Shown here: positions 12,901 to 64,000 of the stretch, piece by piece
Layout of the letters: each line of letters starts with the position of its first letter
Position numbering within the stretch: the first letter of the stretch is position 1
Source of the DNA: Eutreptiella sp. 'Long Island Sound 2002'
Lineage: Eukaryota; Protista; Euglenida
Assembly (NCBI GenBank): GCA_964036045.1
Contig: OZ038378.1
Span: forward strand, 108,438,001-108,502,000
Direction: 5' to 3'
Length of the DNA: 64,000 bases
The notes under the pieces: model-generated
The model's database searches: none
Told to the model about the DNA's origin: nothing
Seen by the model: only the letters and a program-made list of their open reading frames with translations
Position numbers and translations under genes: made by a program

Positions 12901-13130
12901 CTAATCCTCCATCAAAAACGATTGTACTCCTTCAATGGCTCGTACCATGTCCTTTTCCTTCATTTGCGCCTAGACCGCTTGCACCTTGGCATCTCGGACT
13001 TGGGCCAGCTCCGCGCACGATCCCATCACCAGAAAGCATTTGGCCTCGCCTTTCTCCAAGAGACGCTGCTCCTCGATAATGCGCTTGGCCTCTGCAGTCT
13101 CCTGGGCGTTGCCATGCATGGGAATGTCCA

Positions 13131-13571
13131 TCAATGCTTTTCCAGCTGGGTAGGCGCAACGACTGAGGCAATCGGCAGAGTGTTGTCCTTTCCAGGCACA
13201 TACACTACGGTCAAGTCAAACTCGGCTAGCGTCTCTTGCCACCGGGCGCGTCGGGCTGCCGGACCCGAGGGGGTGTCGACGTGCTCCTTGTGCCAAGTCT
13301 GCAAAGTTTGATGGTCGGTGTACACGACAATGGGTTGCAAACCAATATGCCTGCACCACTTGCGCAAGGCGCAGATAATGGCATATGTCTCCTTTACCCT
13401 CGCAGTCCAAGTGCGGCGTTGCCCCTCCGCCAAAACTCTACTCCAAAAAGCCACTGGGACATGGGAACCATCCTCTCAGACTAGCCCCAGGACTGCTCCC
13501 ACGGCATAATCCGATGCATCGGTGCGGAGCACAAATCCTTTGTCCAGATGGATAAGGAATGATCCCAACTT
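13131..13571 (-). pseudogene. pol: G2 RNase H (continues from 21684 across the LINE-A insertion)
   Basis: FVLRTDASDYAVGAVLG; KETYAIICALRKW; VYTDHQTL. Confidence 0.9.
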
Positions 13572-17259: not shown

Positions 17260-20200
17260 GTGAGGGAGTACGAAAGGGTTGCAATGTTTTGGAAATTTCA
17301 CCTACTTTTCAGCGCCCCAACTTCAAAAATCGGTGTTGCACTTTTCGTACACACCTCAATCTCCCCAATACCCCCAGCACTTACCGTACACATACCTGGC
17401 ATACTCATGTCCACACAGCTGCATCTCCACCCTGACCCCTTGATTCCCGCACTGAGGATTGCCTCATATTACGGCCCCCATTCCATAACAGAAAAACGTT
17501 GATGCGAACCAGTTCTCAACTCCCTCCTCCGGGAGGCATGTATCGTTCTCGGCGACTACAACTGCACCACCCATCACTCTCACACCACCACTCTCACTTC
17601 GAATCTATGGCCCTGGCTCATAGCCAAGGAGCGGTCGGGTGCCCTGAGTGATCTACTCCTACCCTTCACCACCTCCACACCATATACGCGGGTTAGGCGA
17701 TATGCTGGTACTAAAAGCTACATTGACCGTGCTTATGGTACCCGACTGTACCAAGCCTGCTACAGCCCCTCATCTGCCGAAGTGGTAGATTTTTCTAGAG
17801 TGCATGGGTCTTCAGATCATGACCCAATTATCATCCGCTCCATTCCCTGGACCACCCCCCAGATACCTGAACCCAGATGTGCACAGTGGAACCGCCGTGA
17901 CCTGCACGAATTCCGTTCCCTCATGGAACACTCTGTACATGATCTACAGACCCCCACCAGCTTTCATGATGTGCAGTCCACGTACACACCCTTGTTCAAC
18001 ATATGCTCCACGCAATGTGCACGGTAAATTCTGCCAAGCCAGCCCTCCAAACCAATTCCACAGAAATTTCTGACTGCCACCAAGTGGTCAAGCAGCTGAC
18101 CCGACAGGCCAAGCGTCGGTCCAAAGTGTTCTACCGACGTATCAAACACACCCTGCTTACTCTTTCTGCTCCCTCCACCCTCCCCGTACCCTCCCGCAAG
18201 ATACAGCGCATTCTCCCCCTGGAATGCACGTGCATCTGAGCTCATCACCCCCCAGCCCTTACTGCCTGACCCCCCCCCCCTCTGTGGAGGAACTCCGCAT
18301 TTCGGCGAAGTCCTCCCGAAAGAAGTCCCCTGGACCCGATGGCGTGCCCGCCTATTTGATTGCTGTCCTCCCAGATGCTGCCTTCTCCATAGTACATCAG
18401 TGCCTCGCACTGTGTTATGATGTTTGAGACATCCCTCACAGCTGGCTTATATCAGAGACCCTGTGCATATTTAAAGGTAAAGGTTCCTGGAGGGATCCTG
18501 ATAGGTGGCGACCCATTGCCATGAGCAATTCGGTGTACCGACTGCTCATGCGATGGATCTTGAAAAAACTGTATCCCCTCCTCTCTCCACAAATACACTC
18601 GCACCAGTTTGGTGGGGACGAGGCGTCTCAACCCATGCCACACAAACCTGTTTTGATGACATTGACAATGGCACCAGTTGGGAATCCATTTTTACCTTTG
18701 ACATGTATCATGCCTTCGACAGTCCACCAAAAATACTCATCAGGGATGTACTGCAATGCATTGGGAGCCCCACCAAGTTACTGCTTTTCATTTCCACGGT
18801 ACTTGAGCACGGGTCCACATACATCAGGGGTACACCAGATGAAACCTTCAGTACTACCCACAGCGTGAAACAGGGGTACCCCATTTCCTTCTTCCTTTTT
18901 GTCATTGCTTTCGAAATTCCTCTACGCTATATTCACTCCTACAATATACTATTCTCCGCCTATGTCAACGACATCTCCACCCCAGTTGCACATACGGATG
19001 GTCCCAGAGTCACTTCCATTGTCAAAACAGGCCTGGACCTGATCGGGTGCCAACTGAACGTTAGAAAAATGAGTCCCTCCCTGTTTCTCCACACCGTTCT
19101 CCCCCCCCCATGCTCCCCAAGTATTCACATCCGCCCTCTCCCCTGCAGGTCTCCGCTGATTTCTGGATCCCAGAGAGCTGTTCAACGTGGCGTGACTGGG
19201 CTGACTCCACCGAGTACCCCATGGCCAAGGTATCTCACCTCATGCACTTGGATCATCCCATCCCAAAACATTTCGATGTCAGCCATGCTGTCCAACTGAT
19301 CTTTGGAGAACTACAGGCCCAACTCGCGGAGCTTAACGCCCTCCCCTCTTAGTCACTTGACAGAATACTGGTAGACAACACATTGATCTTTCGCTGCCTG
19401 CTCTATCGATGTGAATGCCTCCCCCTTTCTGCGAACCAGTTGAATCCAATGATCCAAGCCATTGAAAGATATGTGCTTGGAGTCGCGGGGTTACCCTCCC
19501 TCCTTGCCAAGAAAACACTGTCTACCCACCATACTCATGGTTTGGGATTACGCTACTTTGCTGTTCTTCAGCTGATTCGCATACTTGACTCCCTGCACAC
19601 CAACCCACACCTCTTCCACCTCAGCACCAAATCAAAATTTCCCCTATCTCCCTGGCGTCTCTTCGCCACTGCCATCGCCCTGCTTGGCCCCCCCCGCTCC
19701 TCCCCCATGATCCCCCTCCCCGTCTCATGGGGAGCAAAACGTGCCTTGCGGGGTGCCTCTACAGTGATCACAGACTCTGGGATCACTGCATACATCCTGC
19801 CTGGACCCAACCCCCCCCATGACTGCACCTACACTGATGGCAGTCGACTTGGTACCCCCCCTGCCTCAGGCGCATGTGCACTCCTCCCCGATGGGGGCAT
19901 AGTCGTCTGCCGCGTCCCTGGACCCCCCAAACTCGTACAAGACAGAGGTTATTGGCATCCTCCTTGGTTCAGAATTTTCTCCCCCCTCATCCAAAATCAA
20001 GGTTGACTGCAAGGGCGCTATCTCCTCCACCACAGGAGACAGGCGCCCTCTACGCTATGCTCATTATGTCCAGCTGGCCGGGAAATCCATCCAGGGCAAA
20101 TGCCATACAGTAGAATGAATTGAGGGTCACACGGGCCACCTTTTCCAGGAACGATCCGATGAGCTCACCAAGTACGGCTCCACTCTCCCCCTCCCTCCCC

Positions 20201-29389: not shown

Positions 29390-32151
29390 AGATAAGGTCC
29401 GTAGGACCAGCCCCTGCCATTGTGGGGGCTCTACAGCCAATTCCTGATCTTCCCACCTTTCTCCCGATGACACCCATTGTCCTAGATTTCACCAATGCTT
29501 CCATTCTTTCCAATCACCAATTTCGAAATTACAAAAATGTCCCAAAAACACACCCCTTGGCAACCCTTGGCAAGGAAATCCAAATATGTGATCCATCAAT
29601 TCAAATTGAGGGGAGTGTTGAGGACGGAGGCACTTGGGTCCGTCAAAACATGAAAGTCGTGGAGAAGGGAACAAACAATGACAATGTCGGGCAGAGGCGC
29701 TGAGAGGTGGAAATCAGAGATGAAGCCCCGGAAGAAGATATGCAATTATCGAAGACAATGTTGCATCCCTGCTCCAAGATTCGATTTATAGACCATGCAC
29801 ACTCAAACTATGCGTTCCGTTATGGACGTATGATGCCATGCCCGCACAATCCCGACACAACAGCTTGACAAATTCATTGGGTCAGGAATGATCAGGCATG
29901 ACACAACGACATGAATACGGTCAATTATATGCATGGCAACACACGAAGAAAAGCATATAAAACACAATGGCCTCATTGGGATCCTCGCCAAGCTTGGGCA
30001 CACATGGCCCATCGTTACTCTTGCCCACAAGACAGTAAAATGGAGTAACCATCATGGGTTCCAAACATAAGTAATGTTGTCACCGTTGATCAACCATGAC
30101 ACCATGGCCCCCATGAACACAAAGCACGGCATGGCCACATACATGACTTGCCCACCCTCATGAGGTCACCAATGTGCACGTATGAAGAACTTGCTTTGAG
30201 GCTAACTAAATATGAGTCGGGAGAAAGACCTCACGGAAATGGCAAACACTACTTGTCACCTGGCATGTGTGACATATATATTGTCATGATGGCAATGCTT
30301 CGGTACTCCACACCGGACGCCGGGTGCCCGTCACTCAGCGATGTCATACACCATGGCCAGCACGTGAATAGGCTTGACCGGTTTACTTGCCCCTTGCAAA
30401 GAAGACTCCAAGAAGGGCCAGCCCACCAAGCCTCACATGTTTACGGTGTGCTACATACCAATTGCTGGGCTCCCCACGGTTAGAGTGTCGCAAACCTAAG
30501 ACATGAGTAGAAAAGCCAACGCACAACATATGTCTCATGCCCTCACATCCTTGGACATGCCACTGGGTCCGATCACTTGGTGCCTAATTGCTTGGGACCC
30601 GATGGCAGAGGCAAACGCAATGGTCATGTGCATTGGAAACCATCCACACATGAACAAGTGAAATCCATATTGCCTATTTGCATGTTTGTGGGACACCGAA
30701 CGAATTCAATGCATGCTACTTCGAGAGGGATTGGGTAAGAAGTTTGGATAAGCAAATGCCCCGGGTCACATGTAGAGACCTAGACCCGGCCCGCAGAGTG
30801 AGTGCACAAAGAGAGGTCTCCCGGGTCCATTGAGAGCACATCCATGTGGGATTGTCCCAAAGAGGAGTAGTCCTGACTCGAAGAGAGATGGTCCCGCCCC
30901 AATCCAGGGCTTGAGAGAAATGATCCCGCCCCAATCCATGCCCGGAGAGAGAACCTAAGCAATCCATGGCCAGCAAGGGAGAACCTAACCGATCCATGGC
31001 CAAGGAGGAAGAGCCTAACCAATCCATTGCCCAGGAGAGAACCTCACCAAAGCTGAATCCTGAGAGCATGCATATGGAGGGAGAGTTTCGTCTAGCCATC
31101 ACCTAGGATTTTATGGGGTCCAAAAATCCCAAAACCAGCTACAGTCAGAAATACTACTTTTTTTGTCAAATTATACCATAAAGACCATTCCTGCAGACGG
31201 AGTGAGGATCCCCAACCTTCACCGACGATTGTTCCTATATCCAATTGCCAAATTAAGTGACCTCATGCCCTATTGCTTGCTGCCAAGAGAAGGATAGTGG
31301 ATCACCAACCATGTTTGATCAATGAGATGAATTCACCGAAGGTCGCCGGAGTAAGACGGCAAATGAGAGGTTAACAACCAGGGCATAAGTGCAGTTCTCA
31401 TCCTTTAGCATGTTCACCCATTGCACGTGCACACATCATGTTCAACACACACAATCACCAAAGATTAACCCTCCTTGATTCCATGGGAGATCAAGTTGTC
31501 ATGACACATGGAAAAGCAAACAAATGATAAACGAAGGAATGAGGAATTGCTTTGCCTTGCGGAGCAATGACCAAGTTACATGCTTCCCTTTGGGTGCGCC
31601 TACCTCAGCCACATCCACTCCAACTTCACTTCCACTAGGGCTCCTCCAGCTTCAAGGGACTTGTGGTCCCCCATGACCGTAGGCGTTGCACTGCCGAAGC
31701 AGATGCGCCCATTAACGTTCACCAGTCTCCCCTCAAGTGCAGTGATGCACCTAAGGCTGACAGCCGGTGTGGGTGGAGGCACCACAGCAGGGTTTAGCCA
31801 GACCCTTAACCCCGGGCCTTCTATCATCCACTGCAGTTGCCCTAGCTGCCGATTTGTTTCCATTTCTGTAACAGGATAGGACTAACACTTTTAGCACCTG
31901 TTGGGAAGAGTTTTCAGACGATCGGCCCGCATTAAAGAACACAGAGCACACACACGCCAACAGGAACACGAGAAGGGGGCGCGCACACAAGGCAGCCCTG
32001 GTCAGAACTAGAAATGAGAAATTCGGCATCCCGTGAGTTATAAATAATATAAATTTGGAATTCCCCTGAATTTATGCCAGAAAACTGCTGAAATCGCTGA
32101 AATTGGTGAAGTGTAGGATAGAGTGCAGCAAAAGCTGGTTTCGCGCGGTCA
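29390..32151 (-). repeat. G2 5' LTR (~2.76 kb)
   Basis: Begins TGACCG on the minus strand at 32151; colinear with 7390-10048; ~80-bp extra segment near 31100-31185. Confidence 0.8.
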
Positions 32152-32429
32152 TGGGTAAGGGGGGTGGGTCTGTCCCCTGTCCCCCCGCCACTGCGGTGTC
32201 GGTTGAGTGGTGGCGGGTTTAACGTTCCGGTGGCAGTTTGTGTGGGTGGGCCGCCACTGGCGGGGGAGGGGGGGGGGGTTGTACCGACAGGCGTGTGGAG
32301 GCCTCTAGCCCGTGCTCGGTGGGCTGGTGGGTGTTGTCCCACGGCTGCGGGCGCCTTTCTCTCCTTTCCGGGCTGTGAGGCGGCTTGAGCGGGTTAGACC
32401 CATGGTTAGCGTCCCTTGGCTTGGTGCCC

Positions 32430-32700
32430 TGGTGTTTTGTGCTGTGTTGTGCTGTGTTTTGCCTTGCTGCGCCGCGCCCTTCTGCAATGTGCTGCGGTGT
32501 GCCCTGCTCTGCCGTGCCGCGCAGTGTCGTGTCGTGCCGTGGTGTGTCCTGCCGTCACGTGGCGAATTGTGCTGTGCTGTACCGTGCCACGCTGTGTTAT
32601 GCTGTGCTGTGTTGCGCCCCGGTGAGCATCGGTGGTGTGCTGTGCTGCGGTATGTTGTGCTGCGTCGTGTTGTGACGTGCTTTGCTGTGCTATGGTGTGT
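32430..32700. repeat. Degenerate (TGTGC)n/(TGCCG)n pentamer microsatellite
   Basis: Repeated gtgctgtgttgtgctgtg-type units. Confidence 0.75.
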
Positions 32701-34689
32701 GGTCGGTCCATCGTACCTCCGGTCTGGCGTCGGGTGGCGTCGGCGCTCGTTAGACTGGTGGCCTTGTTGTGTGGGACGCGGGCTGAGGTTATCTGGCTGG
32801 CTTGTGGCTGGGGAGCGTGATTTGGCGTGGTGCAGCTCGCTGAGTCTATGTTGCGGTGGTCTGGGTGTGCCGTTCGGTCTGGTGGGCCAAGCGGGTGTCC
32901 GCGTGGTTGCCCTCCCTAGGGGGCTGTGCCTTGGTCCCGTGAGCTCTGAGGGTTCCCGTCCCCAGGGATGGGCTGGGTTCTGTGGGGATTGTTGGGGTGG
33001 TCCCCTCGGCTGGGTTGGGTCCCCTCCGATCCCTCCCCTCTGCCTCCGTGTCGTTCCCCGTCCTTGGTGCCGCGGCGGTGTCCCCTGTTTTTTCGGCGCC
33101 CGGAAGTTCTTGTGCGCTGTTGCGTTGCGTGGTGCTATCCGCGTTTCCCTAAGTGTGTGTATCCCCCTTCCCCTGTGTTGGTGTACTCTCGCTCCCCTGT
33201 GCGGAGACAGGTGGTCGGTGCGCGCGACCCGGTGTGGTTCGTGCCGTGTCAGGTCTGTGCTGCGGCGGCGCGTCTTGGCGGGCGTGCGCCTCCGGGTTGG
33301 TCGGCCTTGTGCCTAGGTGTGGCGGTGTCCCTTGGGGGTCTCACGGTGTCAACCAGGTGCAGAGGTGGGGCGCTGCAGATCCCTCTGGTGTGGTGTGCCC
33401 CTGCTTCGTTGTGCGCGTCCTGGTTCCCGTCGTCATGCCCTCTCCCCCAGTGATGTGGCCCCTGGCCTTTCCTTTTCCCCTTGTTGGTGATCCTTCGGTG
33501 GTTCCTTGCCCCCGTGTTGTTTTGGCCCCGATGACCTGTCCCGGTGGGTGACTGCCTGTTACCTTGGGCTCCTCCTCGCCCTCTTGCGCCCGGCTTTCCC
33601 TTTGCCCTTTCTCTTTCCGGTGTGCTGTTGGTTGGTTGGAGGCGAGGTCTGTGGGGCGCCCATGGCCCATGCCTGGGGCCCGGTGGTCTGGAGCCGGGTG
33701 CGGAGGGTTTCGGGGGTGTAGGGGTGGCGGAGGCCCTGGATAAGGTCCTGGAGGAGGGCTTCCCTTGCCCTCTGCGGCATGGCGGCCTCAGGGGCGGGGT
33801 CATCAGGGTCGGCGGGGGTGCGGATGAGGACTTCCTGGAAAGTGCGGAATGAGTGACGCCCTTCACGCCTTCCCGTTCCCCCAGCCCACTTCACCGAGTG
33901 GCGAATCTACTGCAGGGCGGGGTCAGACTACCAGGCGAGGTGGGCGGGGACCAGGGGGAGGTAGGGCTCCGAGCTCCAGGTCCTGGAGCGGCGCTGGCGG
34001 GAGCTCGGGGTGGAGGAGGCGTATCGGTAGCGCGGGGAACGGGAGGCACAGTGGCGTTCCTGGGGGGAGGGTGGCGCAAATATGGGACGGCGGTGGCGCG
34101 TTTGGTGGCGCTCGGGTGAGTGAGAATGGCGGTCGCGGGCTCCCGGGGGGTCACAGCGGCACCTCGGGGAGCGGCAGCGGAGCAAGTGAGTTGGTGTGGC
34201 GCGGTGGCCCTGCGGGGAGCGTGAGAGTCGGGGGCGGGAGCTTTGCGTGGGGTGGGTGTGGGAGCGTCGCCGTCTGCGGAATCGGGCCTCGTCGCGGGAC
34301 GAGTAGGGCCAGTCAGGAGGCGTCGGTGGGGACTGAGGGGCCTCCTGTGGTGCCACCTTGTACTGGCGGGGGGGAGTCCCCCACCCTCCATGGATCTGCC
34401 GCGTAGGGGCGTGGCGCCGGCTGAGGTGGATGCGGCGGCGGTGGCGGCAGGTGGTACGGGTCCAGTGGTTGTTTGGGGGGTTGTCACGGGTGGGGGTGGC
34501 GCCAGGGGGCCCCTCTGGCGTGGACGTGGTGGCCGGGTGGATACGATTCTTGATAGGGGGGGGGTGCAGTCCCTGGTGGGTTAGTGGGCCGGAACGTCTG
34601 GTGGGTGGTGCTGCCATCCCATGCGCTGGTGCTGTTCGTGCAAGTAGGGTTCTGGCCCGGTGGGGTAGGGTTGTGGGCAGTGGTATTGG

Positions 34690-35280
34690 TGGTGGTGGGA
34701 GTGGTGCTGGGGAGGTTGTTGGGGCTGGTGGTTGGTGGTGGTGGTGGTGGTGGCGGGAGGGCTGGTGGCGGTGGCGCTGTTGGTGGTGGGGATGGTGCTG
34801 TGGGTATGCCCCTGGGATCCCTTGGCGTTCCGGTGGGGCTTGGGGGTCGGGCATCGTTTGCAGCCCTGGGGGCTGTACGGCTTGGTGGATAATGGGGGCG
34901 GGTTGGGAACTTGGCTTGACAGCGACCGAGGCCGAGGGGTCCCACGTTCCCGGGTCGGTCTGGCCGGCGGTGGTGGTTGTTTGTTGAGGGTGGATAATGG
35001 AGCGCTTGGAGATGGAGATGTGGACGAGGGTTTGGACGGGGTCGGGCTGTGTGGCCGCCTCCATGGTGGCGACTCTTGCTGGGGGGAGGGGGGCTTGAGA
35101 TGCGTGCGTGCGGGGTCCTGGCTTGGGTTTGGGCTAGGGTTTGGGTTAGGCCGGGGCCGCTTCTGCTGCCGTTTCGCCTTTTGTGATTTTGGGGCTTTGT
35201 TGGGTGGTGCGGGTGGTGTTGGTGTTGTTGTTGATGTTTGTGGTGCTGGTGGTGCTGTTGCGGGTGGCATTGTCGTTTGG
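34690..35280. repeat. (GGT)n/(GTT)n trinucleotide runs (Pro/His/Thr/Gln-rich on the minus strand)
   Basis: Runs near 34730-34800 and 35210-35270. Confidence 0.7.
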
Positions 35281-36249
35281 GTTCCGGTTTTGATTTGGGG
35301 TCGGGTTTTTGGTTTGGGTCCGGTTCGAGGTTGAGGAGGACCTCTTCGCGGAGGTTTGAGGGCACCGTAGTGCGTGGGGGGGGCTCCAGGTGTGCTGCCA
35401 GGGTGCCTGTGACGGGGTCGGGGGGCCTACGACAGCTTGGCGTGCGGCTGCAGCTTTGACTTTGGCCGTGGCCTTGTGCATGAGGTCGGCGGGGAGGGGG
35501 GGGTCGTCGGAGGAGGTGGAGGACGTTGATGAGCATGAGGATCAGGAGGAAGTGGTTGTTTTGGGGGATGTGGGTTGTGCTGCCATGCTTGGGGGGGCGG
35601 CTTTGTGGGCCGTGACGGCCTCCGCTGCGGCCAGTGTGGGAGGGTGGAGGGCATCTCGTCGGGCTGCAGGCTGGGGGCGGGTGGCTGGAGGGGCCCGGCC
35701 GTGACCTTGTTCAGCGGTGGGCGGGGGAGGCGCAGGGCTGCAGTATCAACCTTCCAGGATCGGCTCGGCTGGGCGTCTGCAATGCCTGAGGCCCTGCGGT
35801 TCGGCGTCCGTTGGGGGGACAAGTCCGCGTGGGCTGCATTTGAGGGCCTGGGGGGTTGGGCCTTGCGTTTCGTGGGTGTGTCTGGTGGTGGTGATGTGGT
35901 TCACTGGGTGGTGTGGGTGTGCGGTGTGGCGTGGGGCTCTTTGCGGTGAGTGAGTGTAGGACGGTGAGGGGTTTTTGGCTGGAGGGTCTGTGGCGGGTGT
36001 GTGTGGGGGGTCGGGCCGATGGGGGAGGCCCGTGTCGCGGGGCCCGGGGCTGCGCGCAATGGTGGGCGTGTGTGGGCCGCTGGGTGGGAAACGAGGAGGG
36101 AAGGGCAGCGGCAGGGGCAGAGTGAGGGGGTGTGGGGCTGGGTTCGCGTGTGCGGTGTGGTTGTACGTGTCCGCTTGCAGCAGCGCACCTGTGTGGTCTC
36201 TTGTAGGCCGGGAGATATGGAGGAGAAGCCTGCCGTTTTCTGCGGCTGC

Positions 36250-37110
36250 GGCAAGGATTTCTCAGACGAGTGTGCGTATTTGGTGGACCTCTTGGTCGGT
36301 GGCGGGAAGAGGGTACTGTAGGGGTGGACTAAGGTGCATGCGCCGGGGGACCCTGTGGATGACGTGGTACCCGCAGGTGTGGGAGTGGTGTGGATTGGGG
36401 AGGGCCCCTTCCGAGTGTCGGGGCCCGCCTCAACGTGTGTGTTGGCGGTGGGGATGGCCCAGATCCAGGGCAAGGTCCCTGTGGACGGCCACTGGCGCTT
36501 GATCCAGCGGGACACGCCGAGCATGGCTGGTCCCAGGTGGTAGCCCGCTTGCCTGGTGCTTATTTGGGCCAGGGCGCGAGCCGGGGCTTGGTCACCGGCT
36601 GGAGGATGCCCCTGAGGACCTTGTACGGGACCGGTGGGGTCCCCTATTGCCCCTGGTGCGGGGGCCCTTGGGTGAGCATGGTGTCGGTCCCCTTGATGAC
36701 CCATTGCTGGCTGGGGGACGTTGCTGTGGCAGCCACTACGTAGTAGTGCCCCTCCTCAAGGACTGTGCACCAGACCTCCAGCGGGGGGTGGTTGATGTCT
36801 CTAGGGGGGGGGCGGGGAGGTTGCGGAGGCCGGCGGCGCGGAGAGCGGTGTTGCGGGTTGGTGCAGTGGCGTGTTCCCACTGTACCGAACAGCTCGGGTT
36901 CGCCGGGTGGTCTTTCTCTGCTGGGTCTCGCCGTAGGCGTGTGGTTCCCCGGCGTGTGACGTTGTGCGTCAGGGCCTGGCCCCACTCGATGGGGGGCATC
37001 CAGATGTGCTGATCTTGGGTTTGATGGCGGGCTCTCCAGAGGACGGAGTCTACGATGGCCTCGTGGAGGCCTTGCCCCGGGTTTGCTAGGTCCAAGAGGG
37101 CCTTGCCGGT
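36250..37110 (-). pseudogene. Ulp1/SENP (peptidase C48)-like cysteine protease domain, complete copy
   Basis: LANPGQGLHEAIVDSVL; VWCTVLEEGHYYVV (His 36746-36748); WVIKGTD (Asp 36683-36685); TCGYHVI (Cys 36373-36375); TDQEVHQIRTLV. Confidence 0.7.
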
Positions 37111-37729
37111 GATCTTCGTCCAGCTCTCTTGCACCTCTCATAGCGGCCTCCTTGATCAGGGGATCCCTGAAGAGCTATTCGGTCGCGTGGTTTTCGTGGC
37201 TGTGGGTCGGCCAGCTTTTGCTTTGCTGTAGGGCTTCCGCCAGGGACCAGTGCACTAAACTGTCCCTGCCTGTATGGAGGGGGCATATCTTGAAGTGTTC
37301 CCAGTTCTCCGGGGTGGTGTCGTCGCATGAGCAGCGGGTGTGTTCTTCGGGGACGTGGATGTGCTTGTGGGCGAGCCAGCGGGCGACCGTGGTGAGGAGT
37401 GTCAGTTGTTCCCTGAGGAGCTGGATTGGTTCTTTTCTGCAGGTGGGCTGGAACGCACGTCGGGCGTAGCACGGAGTGGTGGAAGGGGACTTTCAGCTTC
37501 TTCTGGAGCTCTTGGATGTGTGCTCGGCTGTCCGTGTCTCCGAGCACGTGGGCGAGATGTTGGATGAGGTTGGGGTAATGGTATGCTCTGTCCTGTGACG
37601 TATAGGGGGCGTCCTCCGGTACCCAGTCCGGGGTCCGATGGGGTTCCAGCTTGGGGTATATGTCTTGGAGGTGTTTGTGGTTGCGGTCCAGGTCTGGCAC
37701 CTTGAGGGTCGGTAGGTGTGTAGTGCGCT

Positions 37730-38165
37730 GGTGTACTGCCTGGATGTCGACCTTACCACTTTCGTATTGGTGCCTGTGGGACTCTTTTTTAAGGATGTGA
37801 AGTTGGACGTAAGGTAAGAGGCTGTGGAGGGCTTTCCAGAGTAGCAGTGCTTGGATGCCGAGGCTCGTTACTGTGGCCTTGTTGAGTGGCTGTTGTGCTA
37901 TGTGGAGGAGTAGCTGTGTGTCGACAGTGGCGTCCACTACGAACCAGACCCGGACGACGTGCGGGAGGAGGGCGGGTAGGTCTGACGCGATTTGGCGATG
38001 GCGTCGGCTATGGCACCGAGTTTCCCGTGGCAGGAGGCCCCGTAGGTGGTGTGGCCCGTGTGGTAGTGTCCCTCGTCGTGGGTCAGTTGCAGGGTGGCTC
38101 CCCTGGTGATTGGCTCGAGGGCGGATTAGCCTGACGTGTCGGTGAAAAAGACTACGTCCGCCAGT
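37730..38165 (-). pseudogene. LINE-C RNase H, downstream copy
   Basis: VVFFTDTSG; WFVVDATVD; KESHRHQYESGKVD. Confidence 0.8.
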
Positions 38166-39391
38166 GATAGCTTTGGGAGGCAGCATGGGTTAATGGGCAG
38201 GTACGCGTATATGGCGAGGCCTGTGGTGAGGTTGGCCACCGGGGTTTGGGGCTGCAGAACGGGGGTGGCGTACACCCCTATTCCCTTGGAGATAATGCGT
38301 TTCGCGCGGGGGACATGGCTATGAGTCCTTGTTCTGGTTGTCCTTGTGTGTAGTAGCAGTAGATGTAGTGGACGATGTAAGCCGTGTCCGGGTTCAGGTC
38401 TCCGCATCCGAGGGTTTGTGTTAGGTGTTCTGGTGTGTGGCAGGAATGGTGAAGCGGCTAGTAAGGGTGTTCGTGTTTACACGTTCTGCCTGGTTTGTGC
38501 ATGCTGTAATTGATTGCCAATCCTGCGGGGTCGGCGCGGGGCCAGGTGTGTGAATAGCAATTTGGGTATGTAGTCCGGGTTCCAAGCCACTGTGGGGTTC
38601 CTATCGGCGTAGGGGAAAGACCGGGCCACACATGCGTAGGCCTGTCGTGGTAGGTGAGCCGCGGGGTGGGTGTGGGGGAGTGCTGTGAGGTGCAATACGG
38701 GCCATGGTGTGGCGGGTGCGTTGGGGTCACAGGCCCAACATGTGCGCGGCATTTGTTGGAAGTTGTGGGGGACCGCTGTTAGGTCCTGGGTGGTCATCTG
38801 GTGCTTTGGTAAGAGCCAGCTTGCCCCCGTGGTGGATATCGGTGATCTGTGTGCCTTTGGTCTCGTTGTGGGGCAGTAGTAGGGTTAGCGGTGGGACCAT
38901 GCCTGTCATTCGGGGGAAGGGCTCGTGATGGGACATGGGTGCTGCTTTTTGAAGTCCCGGTAGGCTGATTTCATGTCTTGGTTTCCCGGCAGAGTGTGAT
39001 TCGCTGCCCGCGCCGTCTGTGTGAGGTACTAGTGGAAGGGGCTGTATTGAGTCCACTCAGGAAGTTGTAGGAAGGGGGTATGGCGTGCCTCGCTGCAGTG
39101 AAGGACCCGCATTTCGGAGAGAGTGACGTACACCACTGTGATGGAGGCTCTGACGAGTCAGATGTTGTCGATGGTGCCTTTTCCGTGATGGTGGACGTCC
39201 CCGCCGAGGACGGCTAGGGGTCCTTCCTCCCGGGAGGTGTGGTTGGTGAGCATGGTGTGGTGTGCGGAAGGGAGTAGAAGCTGTAGGTGCTTCCATATAG
39301 GGGTGTTGATGTTGGTGGCCATGCCCGTCTGATTAAGTGCCCAGCGCAGGCATGTGTTGCGGGCCCGTTGTGCGGCTTGCAGGCGGATCGT

Positions 39392-40150
39392 GGGAACCCG
39401 CAGGTGAGGGGGCGTTGTGGCCTGAGGGGGGGTCCTTCCGTGTGTTGGGGCCCGCCTCAACTTGTGTGTGGGCGGTGGGGATGGCTCAGATCCAGGGCAC
39501 GGTTCCTGTGGACGGCCAGCGGCGCTTGATCCACTGGGACAGGCAGAGCATGTCCAGTCCCAGGTGGTAGCCCGCTCGCCCCGAGAAGATTTGGGCCAGG
39601 GCCCGGGCCGGCGTTTCGTCGGCTCGCTGGAGGACGCCCCTGAGGACCTAATGTGGAGTGGCCGGCTCACCTATTGCCCTGGGGGGCGTGGCCCCTAGGG
39701 CTCTGTGCATGATGTCGGTCCCTTTGATGACCCATTTTGGGCCAGGGGACGCTGCTGCCGGGGACACTAGGTAGTAGTGCCGGCGCTCGAGGACTGTACA
39801 CCAGACCTCCGGCGGGGGTTGGTCGCTGTCTGTAGTTGGGGGGGGGGGGTTGTTGTTGGCGATGCGGAAGCCGACAGCATGATGAACGGTGTTGCGGGTG
39901 GGTGCGGTTGCCTGTACCCACTGTTCCGGGTGGCTCGGGTCTGCCGGCTGATCCTTCTCCGCTGGGGCTCGTCGTAGGCGTGTGGTTCCTCGGCGTGTGA
40001 CGTTGGTGTCGGTGTCGTGTGTCAGGCCTGGTCCCACTCCATGGGGGGGATCCAGATGTGCAGCTCTCGTGTTGGTGAGCCCTCCAGAGAACGAGGTCTA
40101 CGATGGTCTCGTGGAGACCTTTCCCCGGGTCGGCTAGGTCGCAGAGGGCC
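39392..40150 (-). pseudogene. Ulp1-like protease, upstream copy truncated just after the catalytic Cys
   Basis: DLADPGKGLHETIVDLVL; VWCTVLERRHYYLV; WVIKGTD; TCG at 39400-39402, then the sequence jumps back to the post-RT region. Confidence 0.65.
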
Positions 40151-40904
40151 TTGAAGGGGAGCTTGGTCAAGCCCCCTTGGAGGCAGTACCAGCCCAGGGG
40201 AGTGTCTCGGGCCCTGCCTTGGAGGGTTGCTCGGAGGAGGATGGGGTCGCTGACGGTGGCTTTTGTCAGGCAGCGGTGTCCTGGGCAGCGGTGTCACCGC
40301 CCCTCTCATGGTGGCCCCCTTGATCAGGGGATCCCTGAAGAGGTGCTCGGTGGCCTGGTGTGTGTGGCTGTTGGTTGGCCAGCCTTCGTGTTGCTGTAGG
40401 GCTTCCGCCAGGGACGAGCCCACTAGTGTGTCCCTGCCTGTATGGAGGGGGCATATCTTGAAGTGGCCCCTGTCCTCTGGGGTCCTATGGTTGCATGGGC
40501 GGCAGGTGTGTTCTTCCACGGCGTGGATGTGCTTGCGCGAGAGCCATCGGGTGACTCTGGTGAAGAATGCTAGTTGCTCCCCGAGGAGCTGGATGCGTCA
40601 TCTCTGCAGGTGGGCAGGGATGCACGCTAGGCGTAGCGCCGAGTGGTAGAGGGGGACTTTCAGTTTCTCTTGGAGCTCTTGGATGTGTGCTCGGCTGTCT
40701 GTTTCGCTGAGCATGAGGGCGAGATGTTGGATGGGGTTGGGATAATGGTATGCTCTGCTGTGTGAGGTATAGAGGGCGTCCTGTGGTACCCAGTCCGGGG
40801 TCCGATGGGGTTCCTGCTTGGGGGGTATGTGCTCGAGGTGTGTGTGGTTGCGGGCCAGGTCTAGCACGTGGAGGGTTGTTAGGAGCGTAGTGCGCCGGTG
40901 TACC

Positions 40905-41345
40905 GCCTCGATGTTCACCTTGCCATTCCAGTATTGGTGCCTGTGGGACTCGTGTTTCACGATGTGAAGTTGGACTTGAGGGGGGAGGCTGTGAGGGGCT
41001 TTCCAGATCAGCAGTGCTTGGGTGCAAAGGCTCGTTGCTGTGGCTTTGTTGAGTGGCTGTCTTGCTACGCGGAGGGGTAGGTGTGTGTCGACAGTGGCGT
41101 CCACTATGAACCAGACCCGGACGACGTGCAGGAAGAGGGCGGGTAGGTTGGCCGCGATTTTGGGGATGGTGTCGGCTATGGCCCCCTGTTCCCCGCGGGA
41201 GGAGGCCCCGTAGGTGCTATGGCCCGTGTGGTGGTCCATGTGGTAGTGTCCCTCGGTGTGGGTCAGTTGCAGGGTGGCCCCCCCGGTGATGGGCGTGGGG
41301 GCGGACTCGCCTGAGGCGTCCCTGAAGAAGACTAGGTCCGCCAGT
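40905..41345 (-). pseudogene. LINE-C RNase H, upstream copy
   Basis: LVFFRDASG; SSRGEQGAIAD; WFIVDATVD; KHESHRHQYWNGKVN. Confidence 0.8.
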
Positions 41346-42699
41346 GATGGCTGTTGGAGGCGGCATGGGTTCATGGGCAGCTAGGCGTATATGGCGAGGC
41401 CTGTGGTGAGGTGGGCCACCGGACCGGTGGGATGCAGGATTGGGGTGGTGTACATCCCTCTTCCTTTGGAGATGATGCGTTTCACTCGGAGGGACATGGC
41501 TATGAGTCCTTGTTCCGGTTGCCCTTCTGTGAGGTAGGAGTAGATGTAATGGAGGATGTAAGCCGTGTCCGGGTTCAGGTCTCTGCATGTGAGGGTTTGT
41601 GTTAGGTGGTCTGGTGTGTTGCACGAGTGGTGGAGCGGATAGTAGGGGTGATTTTGCTTGCCCGTTCAGCCTGGTCGGTGCATGTCGTAATGAATTTCTA
41701 TTCCTGCGGCCCGGGGGCGGGGCCACGTGGGCGTCGTGGTGAATAGCCATTGGGGTTCGTGGTCCGGGTTCCAGAACCAGGGAGCCACTGATGCATAGGC
41801 CTATGGTAGTAGGCCGGCTGTGGGGTGGTTGTGGTGGCGTGCTATGAGTTGCAAAAGGAAGCATGGTGTGGTAGTTGTTTTGGGTTCACAGGCCGGACAT
41901 GTGCGCGGCATGTGTTGGGAGTCGGGGGGGACCGCCGGTAGGTCCCAGGTGGTCATGGGTCTTTTGGTATGCGCCACTTTGCCTCGTGGCGGATGACGGT
42001 GGTTTGCGTGGGTTCGGCCTCGTCTTGGGCCAGTAGTAGGGTTAGCGGCGGGACCTGACTTGTCACTGCGGGGACAGGTTCGTGCTTCGAGCCGATGGGT
42101 GTGTGGGGCGCTATCGCCAGGCGAGATAGGCGTGTTGCGTTTTGAAGTCGGGGTAGGCTGTTTCTCATGTCTTGGTTTTCCGGCAGAGTGTGCTCACTTG
42201 CCCATTCTGTTCGTGTGAGGTACTGGCCGAAGAGGCGGTATTGAGGCTACTCGGGAAGTTTCAGCAAGGGGACGTGGTGTGCCCTGCTGCGGTGAAGGAC
42301 TGGCATTTGGGAGAGAGCGACATATATTACTGTGATGGAGGCTCCGACGAGGTCGATGGTGTTGACAGTGCCCCTCGGGCGATGCTGGAGGTCCCCGCAG
42401 AAGACCGTCAGGGGTCCTTACTCTTGGCATGTGTGGTTAGTGAGTATAGCGTGGTGTCAGGAAGGGAGTAAAAGTTGCAGGTGGTTCCATATGCGGGTGT
42501 TGGTGTTGGTTGGCATGCCCGTCCGGTGGAGTATCCAGTGTGGGCATATGTTGCGGGCCCGTTGCGCGGCTTGGAGGCTGATCGTGGCGACTTTGCGAAC
42601 TTCCGGGGAGTGGTCCTGGGTCATGCGGTGAAGGGGGAGGGAGGTGTGTCTGGTGTAGGCCGCTTTACCTCTTCTCATATGGGTTCCACATAAGGGGGC

Positions 42700-43651
42700 C
42701 ATGCGGCACCTATGGCCCGTGTGAGTATGGAGGTGAGCCAGCCCCTGTGTGGTGGCCATGCCTTGGTGACGGCGCGTGTGGCTGGCTTGAGGGCGGTTGT
42801 GGGGTGTGTCAGGTGGAGTACCTGGAAGCCTATGGAGGCGTTCAAGACCCCCGTGAGGTAGTATGCCAGGCTTTGGTGGGATGGGGAGAGGGCCTTGATG
42901 GCCAGGGACGCATCTCGGGGGAGATAGGCCAGGTGTGATCGCAACTTGGGGGGGAGGGTGGTATCGTCGGGGTTTGTGGTCTGGATCACACCCAGGTGGG
43001 TAGCGGCTTCGGCAACGTGCATGGAGGGCCCTCGTGACCCCAGGGTGGCGGCTGTGGCAGACCCTTTGAACTTCGCGACCGAATTTGTAGGGTGGATGAT
43101 GAGGTTGAGGTAGGAGATGGTCATGTCCAGTAAGTCGTTCGCCTGCTGGGTGACTGTTGGTCCGTCGTCTGGGGTGTGGGGTTCTTATGGGGTGTCTGCA
43201 ACCGTGAGGTTGGTGTCATCCGCGAAGCCCACCAGCAGGGAGAGGAGGGGGTACAACGCGTAGGCCGGGTATAGCTGTTCGATTGCGAGGGCCACGGGGA
43301 GTGTCACGAGGAGGTACAGGAAGGGCTCTTCCGCTCCTCCCTGGGGACCCCGCTGCCTGGCTCCAGGAAGGAGGTGAGGCCCACTCCGGTGCAGACTGTG
43401 TATTTACGGGTGCGGATGTAGTCGGGGGTGAGGTTGTAGAAGGGGAGGCCCATGTGTTTCCATACCACTTCCAGAAGAAGCCAGAGCTGTTCAGTCCGGA
43501 TCCCTTGACTTTGAGGGAGGCGCTGATGAGATCCAGAGGGTCCATGTCGGCTATGGTGTGCTGGAGGACTATGGCCTCGTTTGGGGACCGGCCTGGGATA
43601 GCTCCCCAGAGGCTGGCGGGTATGTGGGGGTCTAGGTTGGGGCGAGAAAGT
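42700..43651 (-). pseudogene. LINE-C reverse transcriptase, 5'-truncated
   Basis: LWGAIPGRSPNEA, ISASLKVKG, GPQGGAEEPFLYLL, VGFADD, HLGVIQ. Confidence 0.9.
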
Positions 43652-44065
43652 TAGAGCAGGGTACCACTGTTTATTGTTTTGATGATATTGCTTTCTTGTG
43701 CACGCTTGCTCCTGCTGCTCCTTCATGTAGCTCAGTTATTCAAGGAATACATTTTTTGTTGAAAGAAACCAAAAATCCAAGTACCCACAGTGCAAAAGAG
43801 GAACCACAGAATCAAATCCAAGACATGAAGGGCTGCAGTCAAAGAAGATAGTGTCTGGACAAAGGAACTCACGATAACTACAGAGGTGAGAAACGATAGT
43901 TAGAAAATATTCTACAATCATTGAAAAACTGACCACATGGGCACTCACTCTTTTATGGGGCCATCTAGAGATGTACACTCTTTGTCTTGGGTCCGATAAG
44001 TTCTGAGGTTGCATGGCTTGTGACGCTGACGTCACTGCCATGTCACATCGGATCTTCCTACTTAG

Positions 44066-46769: not shown

Positions 46770-47275
46770 TGAATTTCTTTCCGAACGAGATCTGCACCAT
46801 CTCCCACAACTTACAACGCCGCAAGAAACTTTCCCTGCAGACTGTCCTCCATCTTTTTCAATGGTTTTGATATTGTGGCCTTGCACGAAGTGGTTCATCA
46901 CATGCCCCCTCCTCTTTGCTACGAATCGTCAAAATTCTTCCACATCGTCAGTCGTACTACTACAAGGGGCACGGCTTTAGTATTGTCCCCGCAACTTGCG
47001 CCCATGGCATCGGAACTCATCACTGACCCACGTGGCTTGTTGACATCTGCCTTGTTACGCCTTCCTGGACTCCTTCCCGTACTCATACTCTCTGTTTACG
47101 CGCCACGAAGCGATGAGGAGTCACGCGAAAACATCATCTCCTTAATTTCTGTTCTTCTAGAACAATATCCACTTCATTGACTCATGGGCAACTTCAACAC
47201 ACTACCGAAGAATGCTCTGGACTCAGAGGGTGTCAACTCCGCAAACGTGTGGCCCTGGCCCTCCAATGCAGTCAA
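46770..47275 (+). pseudogene. LINE-B APE endonuclease, N-terminal part
   Basis: ICTISHNLQ, VALHEV, GTALVL, LSVYAP, MGNFN. Confidence 0.85.
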
Positions 47276-61823: not shown

Positions 61824-62471
61824 ATTCTCCACCCTGCCGCTTCCGACCAGTCACACTGTCCCTCTACCATCAGTCGTCTTTCGTAGACTGACCAAAGAGG
61901 AAACCACGCGATTCTCAACTTCCAGTCTTGTCAATTGGATCAAGACAGCACTCCCTATTTTCGAGACCCTGTCTACCTCTGAACTACTTCGACTCACTGA
62001 CCTCATCGTTGAAGAGTTGAGGAAAGCATTCCAGCGCATTACCAAGCTACCCAACCACAAACCATCAACAGAAAGAAAATTCACAAAATTGATTTCTGCC
62101 ATCACCCGGCCGTCATCCCCTCGGTACACATCTCACTCTTACCAGATGCAACAATTGCTGGACCAATGGAGCCAAACACTGGCCACAAAACGTACCTAAA
62201 CACTGCACTCAGCTCTATTCAGAAAATGTAATATGAAGAGGTCGATAGCAGAATTTTTGCAGCCCCAACAGCCGGAGCCCACGGTTATTGCAGACCCTTC
62301 TGATCAAACGAACATTTCGCACAATCTTGCAACAATTTCTCATTTTTTTCAGACGCATTATCAACCCTCGATGGAGATCCTCCTTTCTCACCTCCTATAT
62401 CAACATTCCAAGAGGCCCTCTCCTTTTCCCCTGCATGCCCACCTTCCACTAAACGGGAACCGCTACCTCTG

Positions 62472-63420: not shown

Positions 63421-64000
63421 GAGAGACAACTTGGAGTTACTTTTTCAAATACTTCAGTCAGAAATCAGAACCTCTTTCTCTAATCTACAACGGGTCCCTC
63501 TGATGCCCCATGAATTTGTACTCCGGTACAATATTCAACTGCTCTCCACCTTGTGTTATTGCATGCTCCTGCACTATCTGCCCGCCCAAGAAAATATGGG
63601 CCCTGGAAAGCATTCTAGGGCAGTCATTCAGTAAAGCAGCAAGTATCTCCTCCTTGACAGCCCCCAAAGATCAGTTTGTCCCTCCGTCTCAAGGAGGCAC
63701 AGGCCTGAGACACTTCGGTTGCGCTCCGCACAAGCAGACCATTAACGAAGTATTGAGGCATTTACATCACGGTTCACCGCCATAAGCATATCTGTCAGTC
63801 TGCACCGCCATCCACTCGGTCACGCCCAACACACTACAGGATACCTTTGCGGCTGCTTGTCACTTTCTCAAACTTCACACAAATGGAATACGCCCATGGA
63901 ATGTCTACAACGCATGCAGCATCCCTCGCAACACTGACATTTACACACAATTCAACAATCGCTTTTGCATAGGTCGTGTTTCAACTTCGTCCGCCACATA

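What the first reader, a model, noticed from the sequence alone, without database searches (positions are those of the whole stretch)
36250..37110. Non-LTR retrotransposon with a C-terminal Ulp1/SENP-like cysteine protease
After RT, RNase H and the zinc knuckle, four Ulp1-family landmarks appear in order. These are PG..L....VD..L, a beta-strand then His (GHYYVV), Asp (KGTD), and Cys (TCGYHVI) followed by a DQEVHQIR..V terminal helix. Ulp1-like proteases are known in some DNA transposons and N-terminally in NeSL-type non-LTR elements. I do not know of a C-terminal placement after RNase H in this kind of LINE. A deSUMOylase could counter SUMO-dependent silencing; that function is inference.
Basis: partly seen in the sequence, partly recalled or inferred. 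Interest (0 to 1): 0.8.

Follow-up and report, generated by a model that had tools for sequence, protein, structure and literature searches.

The report
Worn LINE copy, Ulp1-like protease domain
This stretch is a broken copy of an extra gene carried by a very abundant jumping gene (a LINE) of a Euglena-type alga; intact copies encode a very divergent domain whose conserved residues and predicted fold point, with modest scores, to a SUMO/ubiquitin-type (Ulp1-like) cysteine protease.

Summary
The four landmarks are real. They lie on the minus strand, spread over three reading frames. The window copy is dead: it has three frameshifts, several stops, and two conserved residues lost. It belongs to a LINE family with over 12,000 first-look hits in a 2.28-Gb genome that earlier scan notes call Euglena-like. 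The family has a Pfam-confirmed RT and a weak APE match; RNase H is seen by motif only.

In typical copies the domain is not fused to ORF2. It opens a separate, overlapping +1 ORF3.

The domain is a real coding unit. It shows ORF2-like codon periodicity and a synonymous excess among shared variants (p=0.0065). It recurs in three paralogous lineages at about 28% identity, with His, Asp, Gln and Cys conserved. A sister LINE lineage, 45% identical in ORF2, also carries it downstream.

No Pfam, PDB-sequence or own-HMM match to C48 was found. hhalign gives E 0.03, and 2 of 150 shuffles reach that score.

Verdict: probably a divergent CE-clan protease (about 0.8). Its substrate is unknown.

The scan met this family twice before on other DNA (s1-199748, s1-228076) without structural support.

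The parts
39393..43690 (-). LINE copy 1. It is 5'-truncated inside the RT and cut off at its 3' end at 39393, at the conserved Cys of the protease-like domain.
   Evidence: blastn to the C20 copy: window 43179->40291 matches c20 7021-9949, and 40278->39393 matches c20 10367-11255. The upstream extension to about 43690 is read from the translation against P0364.
32366..39393 (-). LINE copy 2, which holds the finding. It starts in the RT thumb region and runs through the RNase H-like part, the knuckle, the protease-like domain and a long Pro/Thr-rich 3' part. Homology is detectable down to 32366.
   Evidence: blastn: window 39393->37131 matches c20 7623-9941, 37131->34249 matches c20 10466-13305, and further pieces run to 32366. 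It is 78% identical to copy 1.
36163..37134 (-). Remnant of the Ulp1-like domain (the finding). It reads in frames -2, -1, -3, -2 and contains stops.
   Evidence: tblastn of the intact L030 domain; translation.
37027..37098 (-). N-terminal helix motif (PG...VD..L), the counterpart of the Ulp1 N-terminal helix.
   Evidence: a predicted helix at residues 39-54 in the AF2 model of L030.
36746..36748 (-). Candidate catalytic His (H153 of the intact domain), retained.
   Evidence: nearly invariant across lineages A, B and C.
36683..36685 (-). Candidate catalytic Asp (D174), retained.
   Evidence: invariant in A3.
36516..36518 (-). Invariant structural Cys (C230, in the helix after the Asp strand), mutated to Gly in this copy.
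36435..36437 (-). Candidate oxyanion Gln (Q257), mutated to His in this copy.
36373..36375 (-). Candidate catalytic Cys (C278), retained. In the models it sits at the N-terminus of a predicted helix.
36235..36309 (-). C-terminal helix of the domain.
37125..37137 (-). Junction where this copy lacks 524 bp found in typical copies. The missing piece holds the end of ORF2, its stop codon and the start of ORF3.
37270..37340 (-). Cys/His knuckle at the end of ORF2.
   Evidence: Read in the translation only; no profile hit.
37740..38155 (-). RNase H-like region. The D-E-D-H-D pattern is seen by eye.
   Evidence: Pfam and PDB sequence searches on intact relatives found nothing.
39394..40230 (-). Remnant of the same domain in copy 1. 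His 39779-39777, Asp 39716-39714, C230 39545-39543, Gln 39464-39462 and Cys 39402-39400 are all retained. It has two stops and one frame change.
43188..43403 (-). RT fragment of copy 1 (motif B to the FADD box).
   Evidence: Translation. Pfam is silent on this 72-aa piece, but family members P0385, P0443 and P0364 match RVT_1.

Best explanation
The stretch is a decayed, non-functional copy of a domain belonging to a third gene (ORF3) of an APE-type LINE. This LINE is among the most abundant repeats of a 2.28-Gb genome that earlier notes of this scan call Euglena-like.

In typical copies ORF2 (APE, RT, RNase H-like part, Cys/His knuckle) ends at a conserved stop. ORF3 opens in the +1 frame, with Met codons 17-26 nt before that stop. 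About 75 residues into ORF3 lies a 300-aa domain.

I read that domain as a very divergent clan-CE (Ulp1/SENP-like) cysteine protease. His153 sits at the start of a beta strand, Asp174 at the end of the next strand, Gln257 after a further strand, and Cys278 at the N-terminus of a helix. One unusual feature is a loop of about 20 residues between Gln and Cys.

Shown here: the coding constraint, the conservation of the four residues across three lineages, the linkage to LINE ORF2 in two lineages, and fold searches in which SENP/Ulp1 rank first.

Inferred: the enzyme cleaves after a ubiquitin-like (Gly-Gly type) C-terminus. Most likely it acts in trans as a deconjugase of SUMO or another ubiquitin-like modifier on host or element proteins during retrotransposition. 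Less likely, it cuts the element's own products.

Odds: about 0.8 for the fold, about 0.4 for the trans-deconjugase mechanism.
For: Coding reality of the domain:
- T content by codon position is 8/20/5% in lineage A and 13/20/1% in lineage B. ORF2 shows the same pattern (10-11/23/4-5%). The low-complexity region downstream does not (6/8/3%).
- Variation among 19 copies by codon position is 207/177/330.
- Shared variants are 61 synonymous to 57 nonsynonymous, against 92 to 161 for singletons: Fisher p=0.0065 in this frame, and p=0.9 and 0.24 in the other two frames.
- Most copies keep the 1050-nt length.

Conservation:
- Three lineages at 26-30% identity share invariant Y154, W168, D174, C230, W234, R237, W239, Q257 and C278, and nearly invariant H153.

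Linkage to the LINE:
- Lineage A ORF2 is followed by the domain about 600 bp downstream (L075).
- The sister ORF2 P0405 (45% identical) is followed by the lineage B domain 2.6 kb downstream on the same strand (L076).

Fold:
- Foldseek's top 50 hold I7L, RickCE, SENP5, CidB and XopD.

Sequence:
- hhalign against a 122-sequence C48 profile gives E 0.034 over 146 colinear columns and pairs C278 with the catalytic Cys. Only 2 of 150 column shuffles and 2 of 150 block shuffles reach that score.
- ESM feature search of P0206: ranks 2 and 3 are clusters carrying PF02902 (score 0.89).

LINE identity:
- RVT_1 E 2.3e-10 (P0385) and 4.1e-14 (P0405).
- Exo_endo_phos E 5.2e-4.

ORF layout.
Against: - No Pfam hit for any window piece, any intact copy, or any of ten distant relatives.
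- A six-frame PF02902 scan of the whole genome lists 41 matches, none in this family.
- My own C48 HMM scores about 0 bits.
- hhalign probability is only 1.5%.
- Both AF2 models are poor: mean pLDDT 43.5 and 49. Only residues 145-256 of the second reach 59-83, and the Cys helix is below 50.
- The ESM Atlas shape search and the viral library gave nothing.
- The Gln-Cys spacing is 21 residues, against 6 in Ulp1 and SENP.
- No relative was found outside this organism, so no annotated bridge sequence exists.
- Expression could not be tested.
Confidence: 0.6

Rival explanations
1. The ORF3 domain is real and conserved but is not a protease. It is a different alpha/beta domain (for example RNase H-like, as in the MutS connector, or a nucleic-acid or protein-binding module), and the His/Asp/Cys pattern is coincidental.
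For: There is no significant sequence match to C48. MutS connector, GNAT and gelsolin-like domains score within 1 Z unit of the SENPs. The Atlas shape search shows no C48. The models are low-confidence.
Against: SENP and Ulp1 take the first ranks in four searches on two models of different paralogs. The four residues that would form a CE active site are exactly the ones invariant across lineages that share only about 28% identity. hhalign pairs the conserved Cys with the catalytic Cys and beats 148 of 150 shuffles. ESM features point to PF02902 clusters.
Confidence: 0.2
2. It has the CE-clan fold but works in cis. It would be a processing protease that cuts the element's own long ORF3 (or ORF2) product, as proposed for the N-terminal protease of NeSL elements and as adenain, I7L and pS273R do for viral polyproteins.
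For: In lineage A, ORF3 stays open for about 1,060 codons after the start. Viral processing proteases of clan CE are among the structural matches. An earlier scan note reports further coding sequence downstream (s1-199748, not tested here).
Against: In lineage B the domain ends its ORF and is preceded only by Pro/Thr/His-rich low complexity, so there is little to process. The long open frame after the domain in lineage A lacks coding periodicity, and stops are rare anyway on a strand with 7-9% T. LINE ORF2 proteins are not known to need processing (established knowledge).
Confidence: 0.15
3. The resemblance arises only from reading a stop-poor, C-rich strand: a chance ORF in decayed non-coding DNA.
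For: The sense strand has 7-9% T, so long ORFs occur in all three frames.
Against: The codon periodicity is like that of ORF2. The synonymous excess is frame-specific. Paralogs are recognisable at 28% protein identity.
Confidence: 0.02

Closest known systems
Ulp1 / SENP1-8 / NEDP1 (MEROPS family C48, clan CE; Pfam PF02902)
   Same: The order is His, Asp, Gln, Cys. His starts a beta strand and Asp ends the next one. The His-Asp spacing is 21 residues, against 17 in Ulp1 and SENP1. A helix precedes a strand that leads to the Gln. Cys sits at a helix N-terminus and is followed by a long C-terminal helix. These structures are the best fold-search matches.
   Different: No profile match to PF02902. 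There are 21 residues between Gln and Cys instead of 6. The Trp after His is replaced by Tyr. The usual Asp-Cys-Gly becomes Thr/Leu-Cys-Gly/Pro. A Pro-rich insert of about 65 residues separates the N-terminal helices from the core. It is encoded by a retrotransposon.
N-terminal Ulp1-like protease of NeSL and Utopia-1_TSP non-LTR retrotransposons (PMC4640811)
   Same: A Ulp1-like cysteine protease encoded by a non-LTR retrotransposon.
   Different: Those elements use a restriction-like endonuclease. Their protease is at the N-terminus of the single ORF and is alignable with cellular Ulp1. Here the element has an APE-like endonuclease, the domain lies downstream of RT in a separate ORF3, and it is too divergent for profile detection.
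Ulp1 domains of DNA transposons: C-terminal in Ginger1 transposases, and in Mutator-like elements (PMC2836005)
   Same: A transposable element repeatedly carries a clan-CE protease after its main enzyme; the function there is also unknown.
   Different: Those are class II elements, and their domains match pfam02902 directly.
Viral clan-CE processing proteases (adenain, poxvirus I7L, ASFV pS273R)
   Same: They are divergent CE folds in selfish genetic elements, and they appear among the structural matches.

Membership tests
Peptidase C48 (Ulp1/SENP), Pfam PF02902 | Significant match to the family profile. | tested here: not met
   hmmscan found no hit on window pieces, the intact L030 domain, or ten distant relatives, at thresholds of E<=10 (window pieces, L030) and E<=1 (distant relatives). 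A genome-wide six-frame PF02902 scan gave 41 matches, none in this family. My own 122-sequence C48 HMM scores about 0 bits. hhalign gives E 0.034 and probability 1.5%, with 2 of 150 shuffles reaching that score.
Peptidase C48 (Ulp1/SENP), Pfam PF02902 | Catalytic His, Asp and Cys in that order, with an oxyanion Gln before Cys, conserved among members. | tested here: met
   In alignment A3 of three lineages, D174, Q257 and C278 are invariant and H153 is present in at least 90% of sequences. The His-Asp spacing is 21. The Gln-Cys spacing of 21 is atypical.
Peptidase C48 (Ulp1/SENP), Pfam PF02902 | The Ulp1 fold. | tested here: inconclusive
Peptidase C48 (Ulp1/SENP), Pfam PF02902 | Cleavage after the Gly-Gly of SUMO, NEDD8 or another Ubl. 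| not testable with these tools
   Needs an enzyme assay.
APE-type non-LTR retrotransposon (LINE) | A LINE-type reverse transcriptase. | tested here: met
   RVT_1 scores: P0385 E 2.3e-10 (41 bits, cut-off 29.6), P0443 E 8.6e-11, sister P0405 E 4.1e-14. P0385 is 87% identical to the C20 copy's ORF2.
APE-type non-LTR retrotransposon (LINE) | An apurinic-type endonuclease upstream of the RT. | tested here: inconclusive
   Exo_endo_phos scores E 5.2e-4 and 20.3 bits, below the 24.5 cut-off, on L075:8965-9912 just upstream of the RT.
APE-type non-LTR retrotransposon (LINE) | Many 5'-truncated copies. | tested here: met
   The window copies start in the RT and in the thumb region. The C20 and L074 copies start inside the RT. 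There are thousands of copies.
APE-type non-LTR retrotransposon (LINE) | A 3' tail and target-site duplications. | not tested
   The 3' ends are buried in T-poor repeats; I did not resolve them.
RNase H-bearing LINE clades (I/Ingi-like) | An RNase H domain after the RT. | tested here: not met
   No Pfam or PDB sequence hit on L030, L031 or P0405 segments. Only the D-E-D-H-D pattern seen by eye.
NeSL/Utopia protease-bearing non-LTR elements | A restriction-like endonuclease after the RT and a protease at the N-terminus of the single ORF. | tested here: not met
   The endonuclease signal is APE-like and upstream of the RT. The protease-like domain is downstream, in a separate ORF3.

The most novel reading that the evidence does not exclude
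An ancient clade of APE-type LINEs has carried its own clan-CE deconjugase (ORF3) through the split of at least two lineages (45% ORF2 identity). With it, the clade became one of the dominant repeats of the Euglena genome. The enzyme would strip SUMO or another ubiquitin-like mark from host silencing or repair factors, or from the element's RNP. That would make it the first LINE-encoded counter-silencing enzyme.
Probability: 0.2. Interest if true: 0.85.

Novelty: new variant of a known kind. Interest (0 to 1): 0.6.

Why it matters
Transposon-borne Ulp1 domains are known in DNA transposons (Ginger1, Mutator-like) and at the N-terminus of NeSL/Utopia elements, but their role is unexplained.

This case differs in three ways:
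- The host is an APE-type LINE.
- The domain sits in a separate ORF3.
- It is conserved between lineages that have otherwise diverged to 45% identity in ORF2.

The families run to tens of thousands of hits in a genome whose published annotation calls only 1.5% LINE and 32.7% unknown repeat (PMC11252322). If that genome is the same organism, which I did not verify, these families may account for part of the 'unknown' fraction.

Lineage B has many identical, intact 341-aa copies. That makes the open question of what a transposon's Ubl-type protease does directly testable in a culturable protist.

The domain is also a useful hard case for remote homology: profile methods miss it and only fold-level ranking sees it.

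Tried and rejected
- **Pfam scans.** Window pieces, the intact domain, distant relatives, and the RT and RNase H pieces gave nothing. The exceptions were RVT_1 on longer family proteins and a weak APE match.
- **PDB sequence search.** For the domain the only hit was a BOP1 WD40 repeat at E 0.017, taken as chance. For the RNase H-like part there was no relevant hit.
- **hhalign.** Against seven C48 domains from this genome, probability was 0.3%. Global hhalign was useless.
- **Structure libraries.** The ESM Atlas shape search gave TM 0.18-0.24 with no C48. The BFVD viral library gave nothing. Foldseek against PDB found no match with E below 0.09.
- **Relatives outside the organism.** None found. 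All 130 phmmer hits that I checked, and all 120 listed profile hits, come from one ENA assembly that is 100% identical to this genome. Cluster look-up gave no names.
- **Expression.** No RNA run holds the sequence, and the laid runs are contigs of unknown kind, so nothing can be said.
- **C230 as an alternative catalytic Cys.** It is invariant and sits 56 residues after the Asp. I rejected it because the models place it mid-helix, and because hhalign and the SENP superpositions put the catalytic position at C278.
- **His167 (the 'HW' of lineages B and C) as the catalytic His.** Rejected because it is Gln in lineage A.
- **In-frame fusion of ORF2 with the domain in the window copies.** Rejected: the frames differ by +1 in both copies.
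- I redid the mapping purely by reference.
- **No consensus or repaired sequence was built.** All searches and folds used naturally intact copies by reference.

Full report
**1. What is at the coordinates**

The finding lies on the minus strand. From 32,000 to 44,000 the plus strand has strong positive GC skew and negative AT skew, so the sense strand of the element is C- and A-rich and T-poor.

I mapped them by reference to a naturally intact copy found elsewhere in the genome, L030:1450-2499:+:

| Feature | Window position | Frame | State in this copy |
|---|---|---|---|
| N-terminal helix motif | 37098-37027 | -2 | present |
| His | 36748-36746 | -1 | retained |
| Asp | 36685-36683 | -1 | retained |
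| C230 (invariant Cys) | 36518-36516 | -3 | mutated to Gly |
| Q257 (invariant Gln) | 36437-36435 | -3 | mutated to His |
| Cys | 36375-36373 | -2 | retained |
| Terminal helix | 36309-36235 | -2 | present |

There are three frame changes and several stops.

**2. Layout of the window**

blastn against a copy on contig C20 shows two head-to-tail, 5'-truncated copies.

- Copy 1 runs from about 43,690 to 39,393. It is cut off exactly at the conserved Cys.
- Copy 2 runs from 39,393 to about 32,366.

The two copies are only 78% identical to each other, so they are old.

Both lack a segment that typical copies carry between the Cys/His knuckle and the domain: 417 bp in copy 1 and 524 bp in copy 2.

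**3. The family**

- A DNA search with the region gave 2,313 first-look candidates, at 79-83% identity to the window.
- The intact 350-aa domain gave 12,149 candidates. The 116 that were scored are 85-100% identical, mostly with no stop and no indel.
- The genome is 2.28 Gb. Earlier notes of this scan call it Euglena-like. The size fits the published 2.14-2.37 Gb estimates for E. gracilis (PMC11252322). I did not verify the species.
- The sense strand has about 9% T and 46% C. Long ORFs in every frame therefore mean nothing by themselves.

**4. Is it a LINE?**

- Window pieces gave no Pfam hit.
- Longer proteins of the same family, 82-90% identical to the C20 copy's ORF2, match RVT_1: P0385 at E 2.3e-10, P0443 at E 8.6e-11.
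- P0364 shows the N-terminal motifs typical of LINE RTs.
- Just upstream of the RT in locus L075 there is an APE-like segment. Exo_endo_phos scores E 5.2e-4 and 20.3 bits, below Pfam's cut-off.
- RNase H could not be confirmed by Pfam or PDB sequence search, even on the better-preserved sister protein P0405. Only the D-E-D-H-D pattern is visible by eye.

**5. Where the domain sits**

I scored 14 copies for both anchors. In 9 of them:
- ORF2 ends at the same conserved stop.
- The domain's frame is +1 relative to ORF2.
- That frame opens 89 nt before the ORF2 stop.
- It has two Met codons 17-26 nt before the ORF2 stop.

The domain is therefore the first part of a separate, overlapping ORF3. It is not the C-terminus of ORF2. 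In both window copies the two frames also differ by +1.

**6. Is the domain really coding?**

Yes, on four lines of evidence.

- **Codon periodicity.** T content by codon position in the domain matches ORF2 and differs from the low-complexity stretch after the domain:

| Region | T at positions 1/2/3 |
|---|---|
| Domain, lineage A | 8/20/5% |
| Domain, lineage B | 13/20/1% |
| ORF2 | 10-11/23/4-5% |
| Low complexity after the domain | 6/8/3% |

- **Position of variation.** Among 19 copies, variation by codon position is 207/177/330.
- **Shared versus private variants.** Variants shared by two or more copies reflect the replicating lineages. They are 61 synonymous to 57 nonsynonymous, against 92 to 161 for singletons. 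Fisher p is 0.0065 in this frame, and 0.9 and 0.24 in the other two frames.
- **Paralogs.** phmmer against 1.84 billion representatives found 130 hits. Among them are two distant groups at 24-30% identity:
  - Lineage B: P0206, 341 aa, 14,879 candidates in this genome at 96-100% identity, with the ORF stopping right after the domain.
  - Lineage C: P0139, 427 aa, 12,016 candidates at about 80% identity.

All of these come from one ENA assembly that is 100% identical to this genome. They are paralogs, not orthologs.

**7. Linkage to the LINE is ancient**

In locus L076 the sister ORF2 (P0405) is 45% identical to lineage A's ORF2 and matches RVT_1 at E 4.1e-14. It is followed 2.6 kb downstream, on the same strand, by the lineage B domain. 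In L075 and L074 the lineage A ORF2 is followed by the lineage A domain.

**8. Is it Ulp1-like?**

*Sequence-level tests fail or are marginal.*
- No Pfam hit on the intact domain or on ten distant relatives.
- None of this family appears among the 41 PF02902 matches of a whole-genome six-frame scan.
- A C48 HMM that I built from 122 sequences scores about 0 bits.
- Local hhalign against that profile gives E 0.034 and probability 1.5%. The alignment covers 146 colinear columns and pairs C278 with the catalytic Cys.
- Only 2 of 150 column shuffles and 2 of 150 block shuffles reach that score.
- An ESM feature search of P0206 puts two clusters carrying PF02902 at ranks 2 and 3, at score 0.89. This is a lead only.

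*Conservation is telling.* Across lineages A, B and C the invariant or nearly invariant residues include H153, D174, Q257 and C278. Their order and spacing fit clan CE, apart from a 21-residue loop between Gln and Cys.

*Structure.* Two AF2 models are poor overall: L030 with 17 sequences has mean pLDDT 43.5, and P0206 with 105 sequences has 49. The second has a beta core at residues 145-256 with pLDDT 59-83. Both predict the following:
- His at the start of a strand.
- Asp at the end of the next strand.
- A helix, then a strand leading to the Gln.
- Cys at the N-terminus of a helix.
- A long C-terminal helix.

*Fold searches.*

| Search | Model | Result |
|---|---|---|
| Foldseek, PDB | P0206 | no match with E below 0.09, but I7L, RickCE, SENP5, CidB and XopD in the top 50 |

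*Caveats on the fold searches.*
- Unrelated alpha/beta domains lie within 1 unit: MutS connector at 4.1-4.3, GNAT at 3.9.
- The two models share part of their alignment, so they are not independent.
- The Atlas and viral searches were blank.

Taken together, I put about 0.8 on a clan-CE fold with a plausible active site.

**9. Mechanism**

Shown: coding constraint, conserved candidate active-site residues, linkage to the LINE in two lineages, and SENP/Ulp1 as the best fold matches.

Inferred: the enzyme is a thiol protease specific for a ubiquitin-like C-terminus.

I favour a trans-acting deconjugase (about 0.4) for two reasons. In lineage B the domain ends its ORF and is preceded only by low complexity, so there is no polyprotein to cut. 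In lineage A the long open frame after the domain lacks coding periodicity. Self-processing remains possible at about 0.15. The anti-silencing idea is untested.

**10. Comparison with known systems**

- Ulp1-like proteases are known at the N-terminus of NeSL and Utopia-1_TSP, which are RLE-type non-LTR elements (PMC4640811).
- They are also known at the C-terminus of Ginger1 transposases and in Mutator-like elements (PMC2836005).
- Searches for 'Euglena' with 'non-LTR', and for non-LTR elements with cysteine proteases, returned no paper describing this element.
- A protease-like ORF3 in an APE-type LINE, undetectable by profiles, is a new variant of a known theme.
- The same family was flagged twice before in this scan on other DNA (s1-199748, s1-228076), both times as unproven.

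**11. Limits**

- Expression could not be assessed.
- I did not verify the species.
- I did not resolve the element's 3' end or target-site duplications.

Noticed in passing
window 32000-44000 (-); L030, L065, L075, L076: The sense strand of these LINE lineages is extremely T-poor and C-rich (7-13% T, 41-49% C; third codon positions 1-5% T), and this includes non-coding parts over 10-15 kb. The cause is unexplained: it could be a mutational or editing bias, or a long-standing compositional habit of the family.
   Followed up: partly
window 37131 and 40278-40291 (-): Both old window copies lack 524 bp and 417 bp at almost the same place: the end of ORF2, its stop codon and the start of ORF3. 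Yet they are only 78% identical to each other. They may represent an older short subfamily rather than two independent deletions.
   Followed up: partly
L071:1-6625 (-); window 61876-63890 (+), 46860-47258 (+), 18188-18616 (+): A different LINE of normal base composition has an ORF2 with Exo_endo_phos and RVT_1, preceded by a 980-aa ORF with a weak 2OG-Fe(II) oxygenase (AlkB-like) hit. Relatives of its ORF2 lie in the window, with tblastn E down to 1e-55.
   Followed up: no
P0362 cluster; L074:10001-13258: A protein cluster (90% identity) of 573 member sequences of varying length represents an ORF2 form. Its representative, P0362, begins inside the RT at the same point as the C20 and L074 copies. 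This suggests an amplified 5'-deleted or chimeric subfamily.
   Followed up: no
L031:3400-6100; L075:18900-22300; window 32400-32700 (-): Long tandem arrays flank or end these elements: units of about 210 bp in the C20 locus, a 65-bp array at L075:4350-5850, and nearly T-free short-repeat tracts.
   Followed up: no
G000:C1:197535377, C1:84247907, C1:84303907, C11:30342262 and others: There are multi-copy open frames of 985-1182 aa with a genuine PF02902 match (about 31 bits). They are probably another transposable element carrying a canonical Ulp1 domain in the same genome.
   Followed up: no
L030:1450-2499 residues 125-175: A local WD40-like match to BOP1 (phmmer E 0.017) falls over the His-Asp strands. 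I judged it chance.
   Followed up: yes
L072:5466-6542 (P0126): A diverged copy of the domain's N-terminal part (40% identity over residues 1-132 of the query) is preceded by about 128 residues of normal-composition sequence not seen in the other copies.
   Followed up: no
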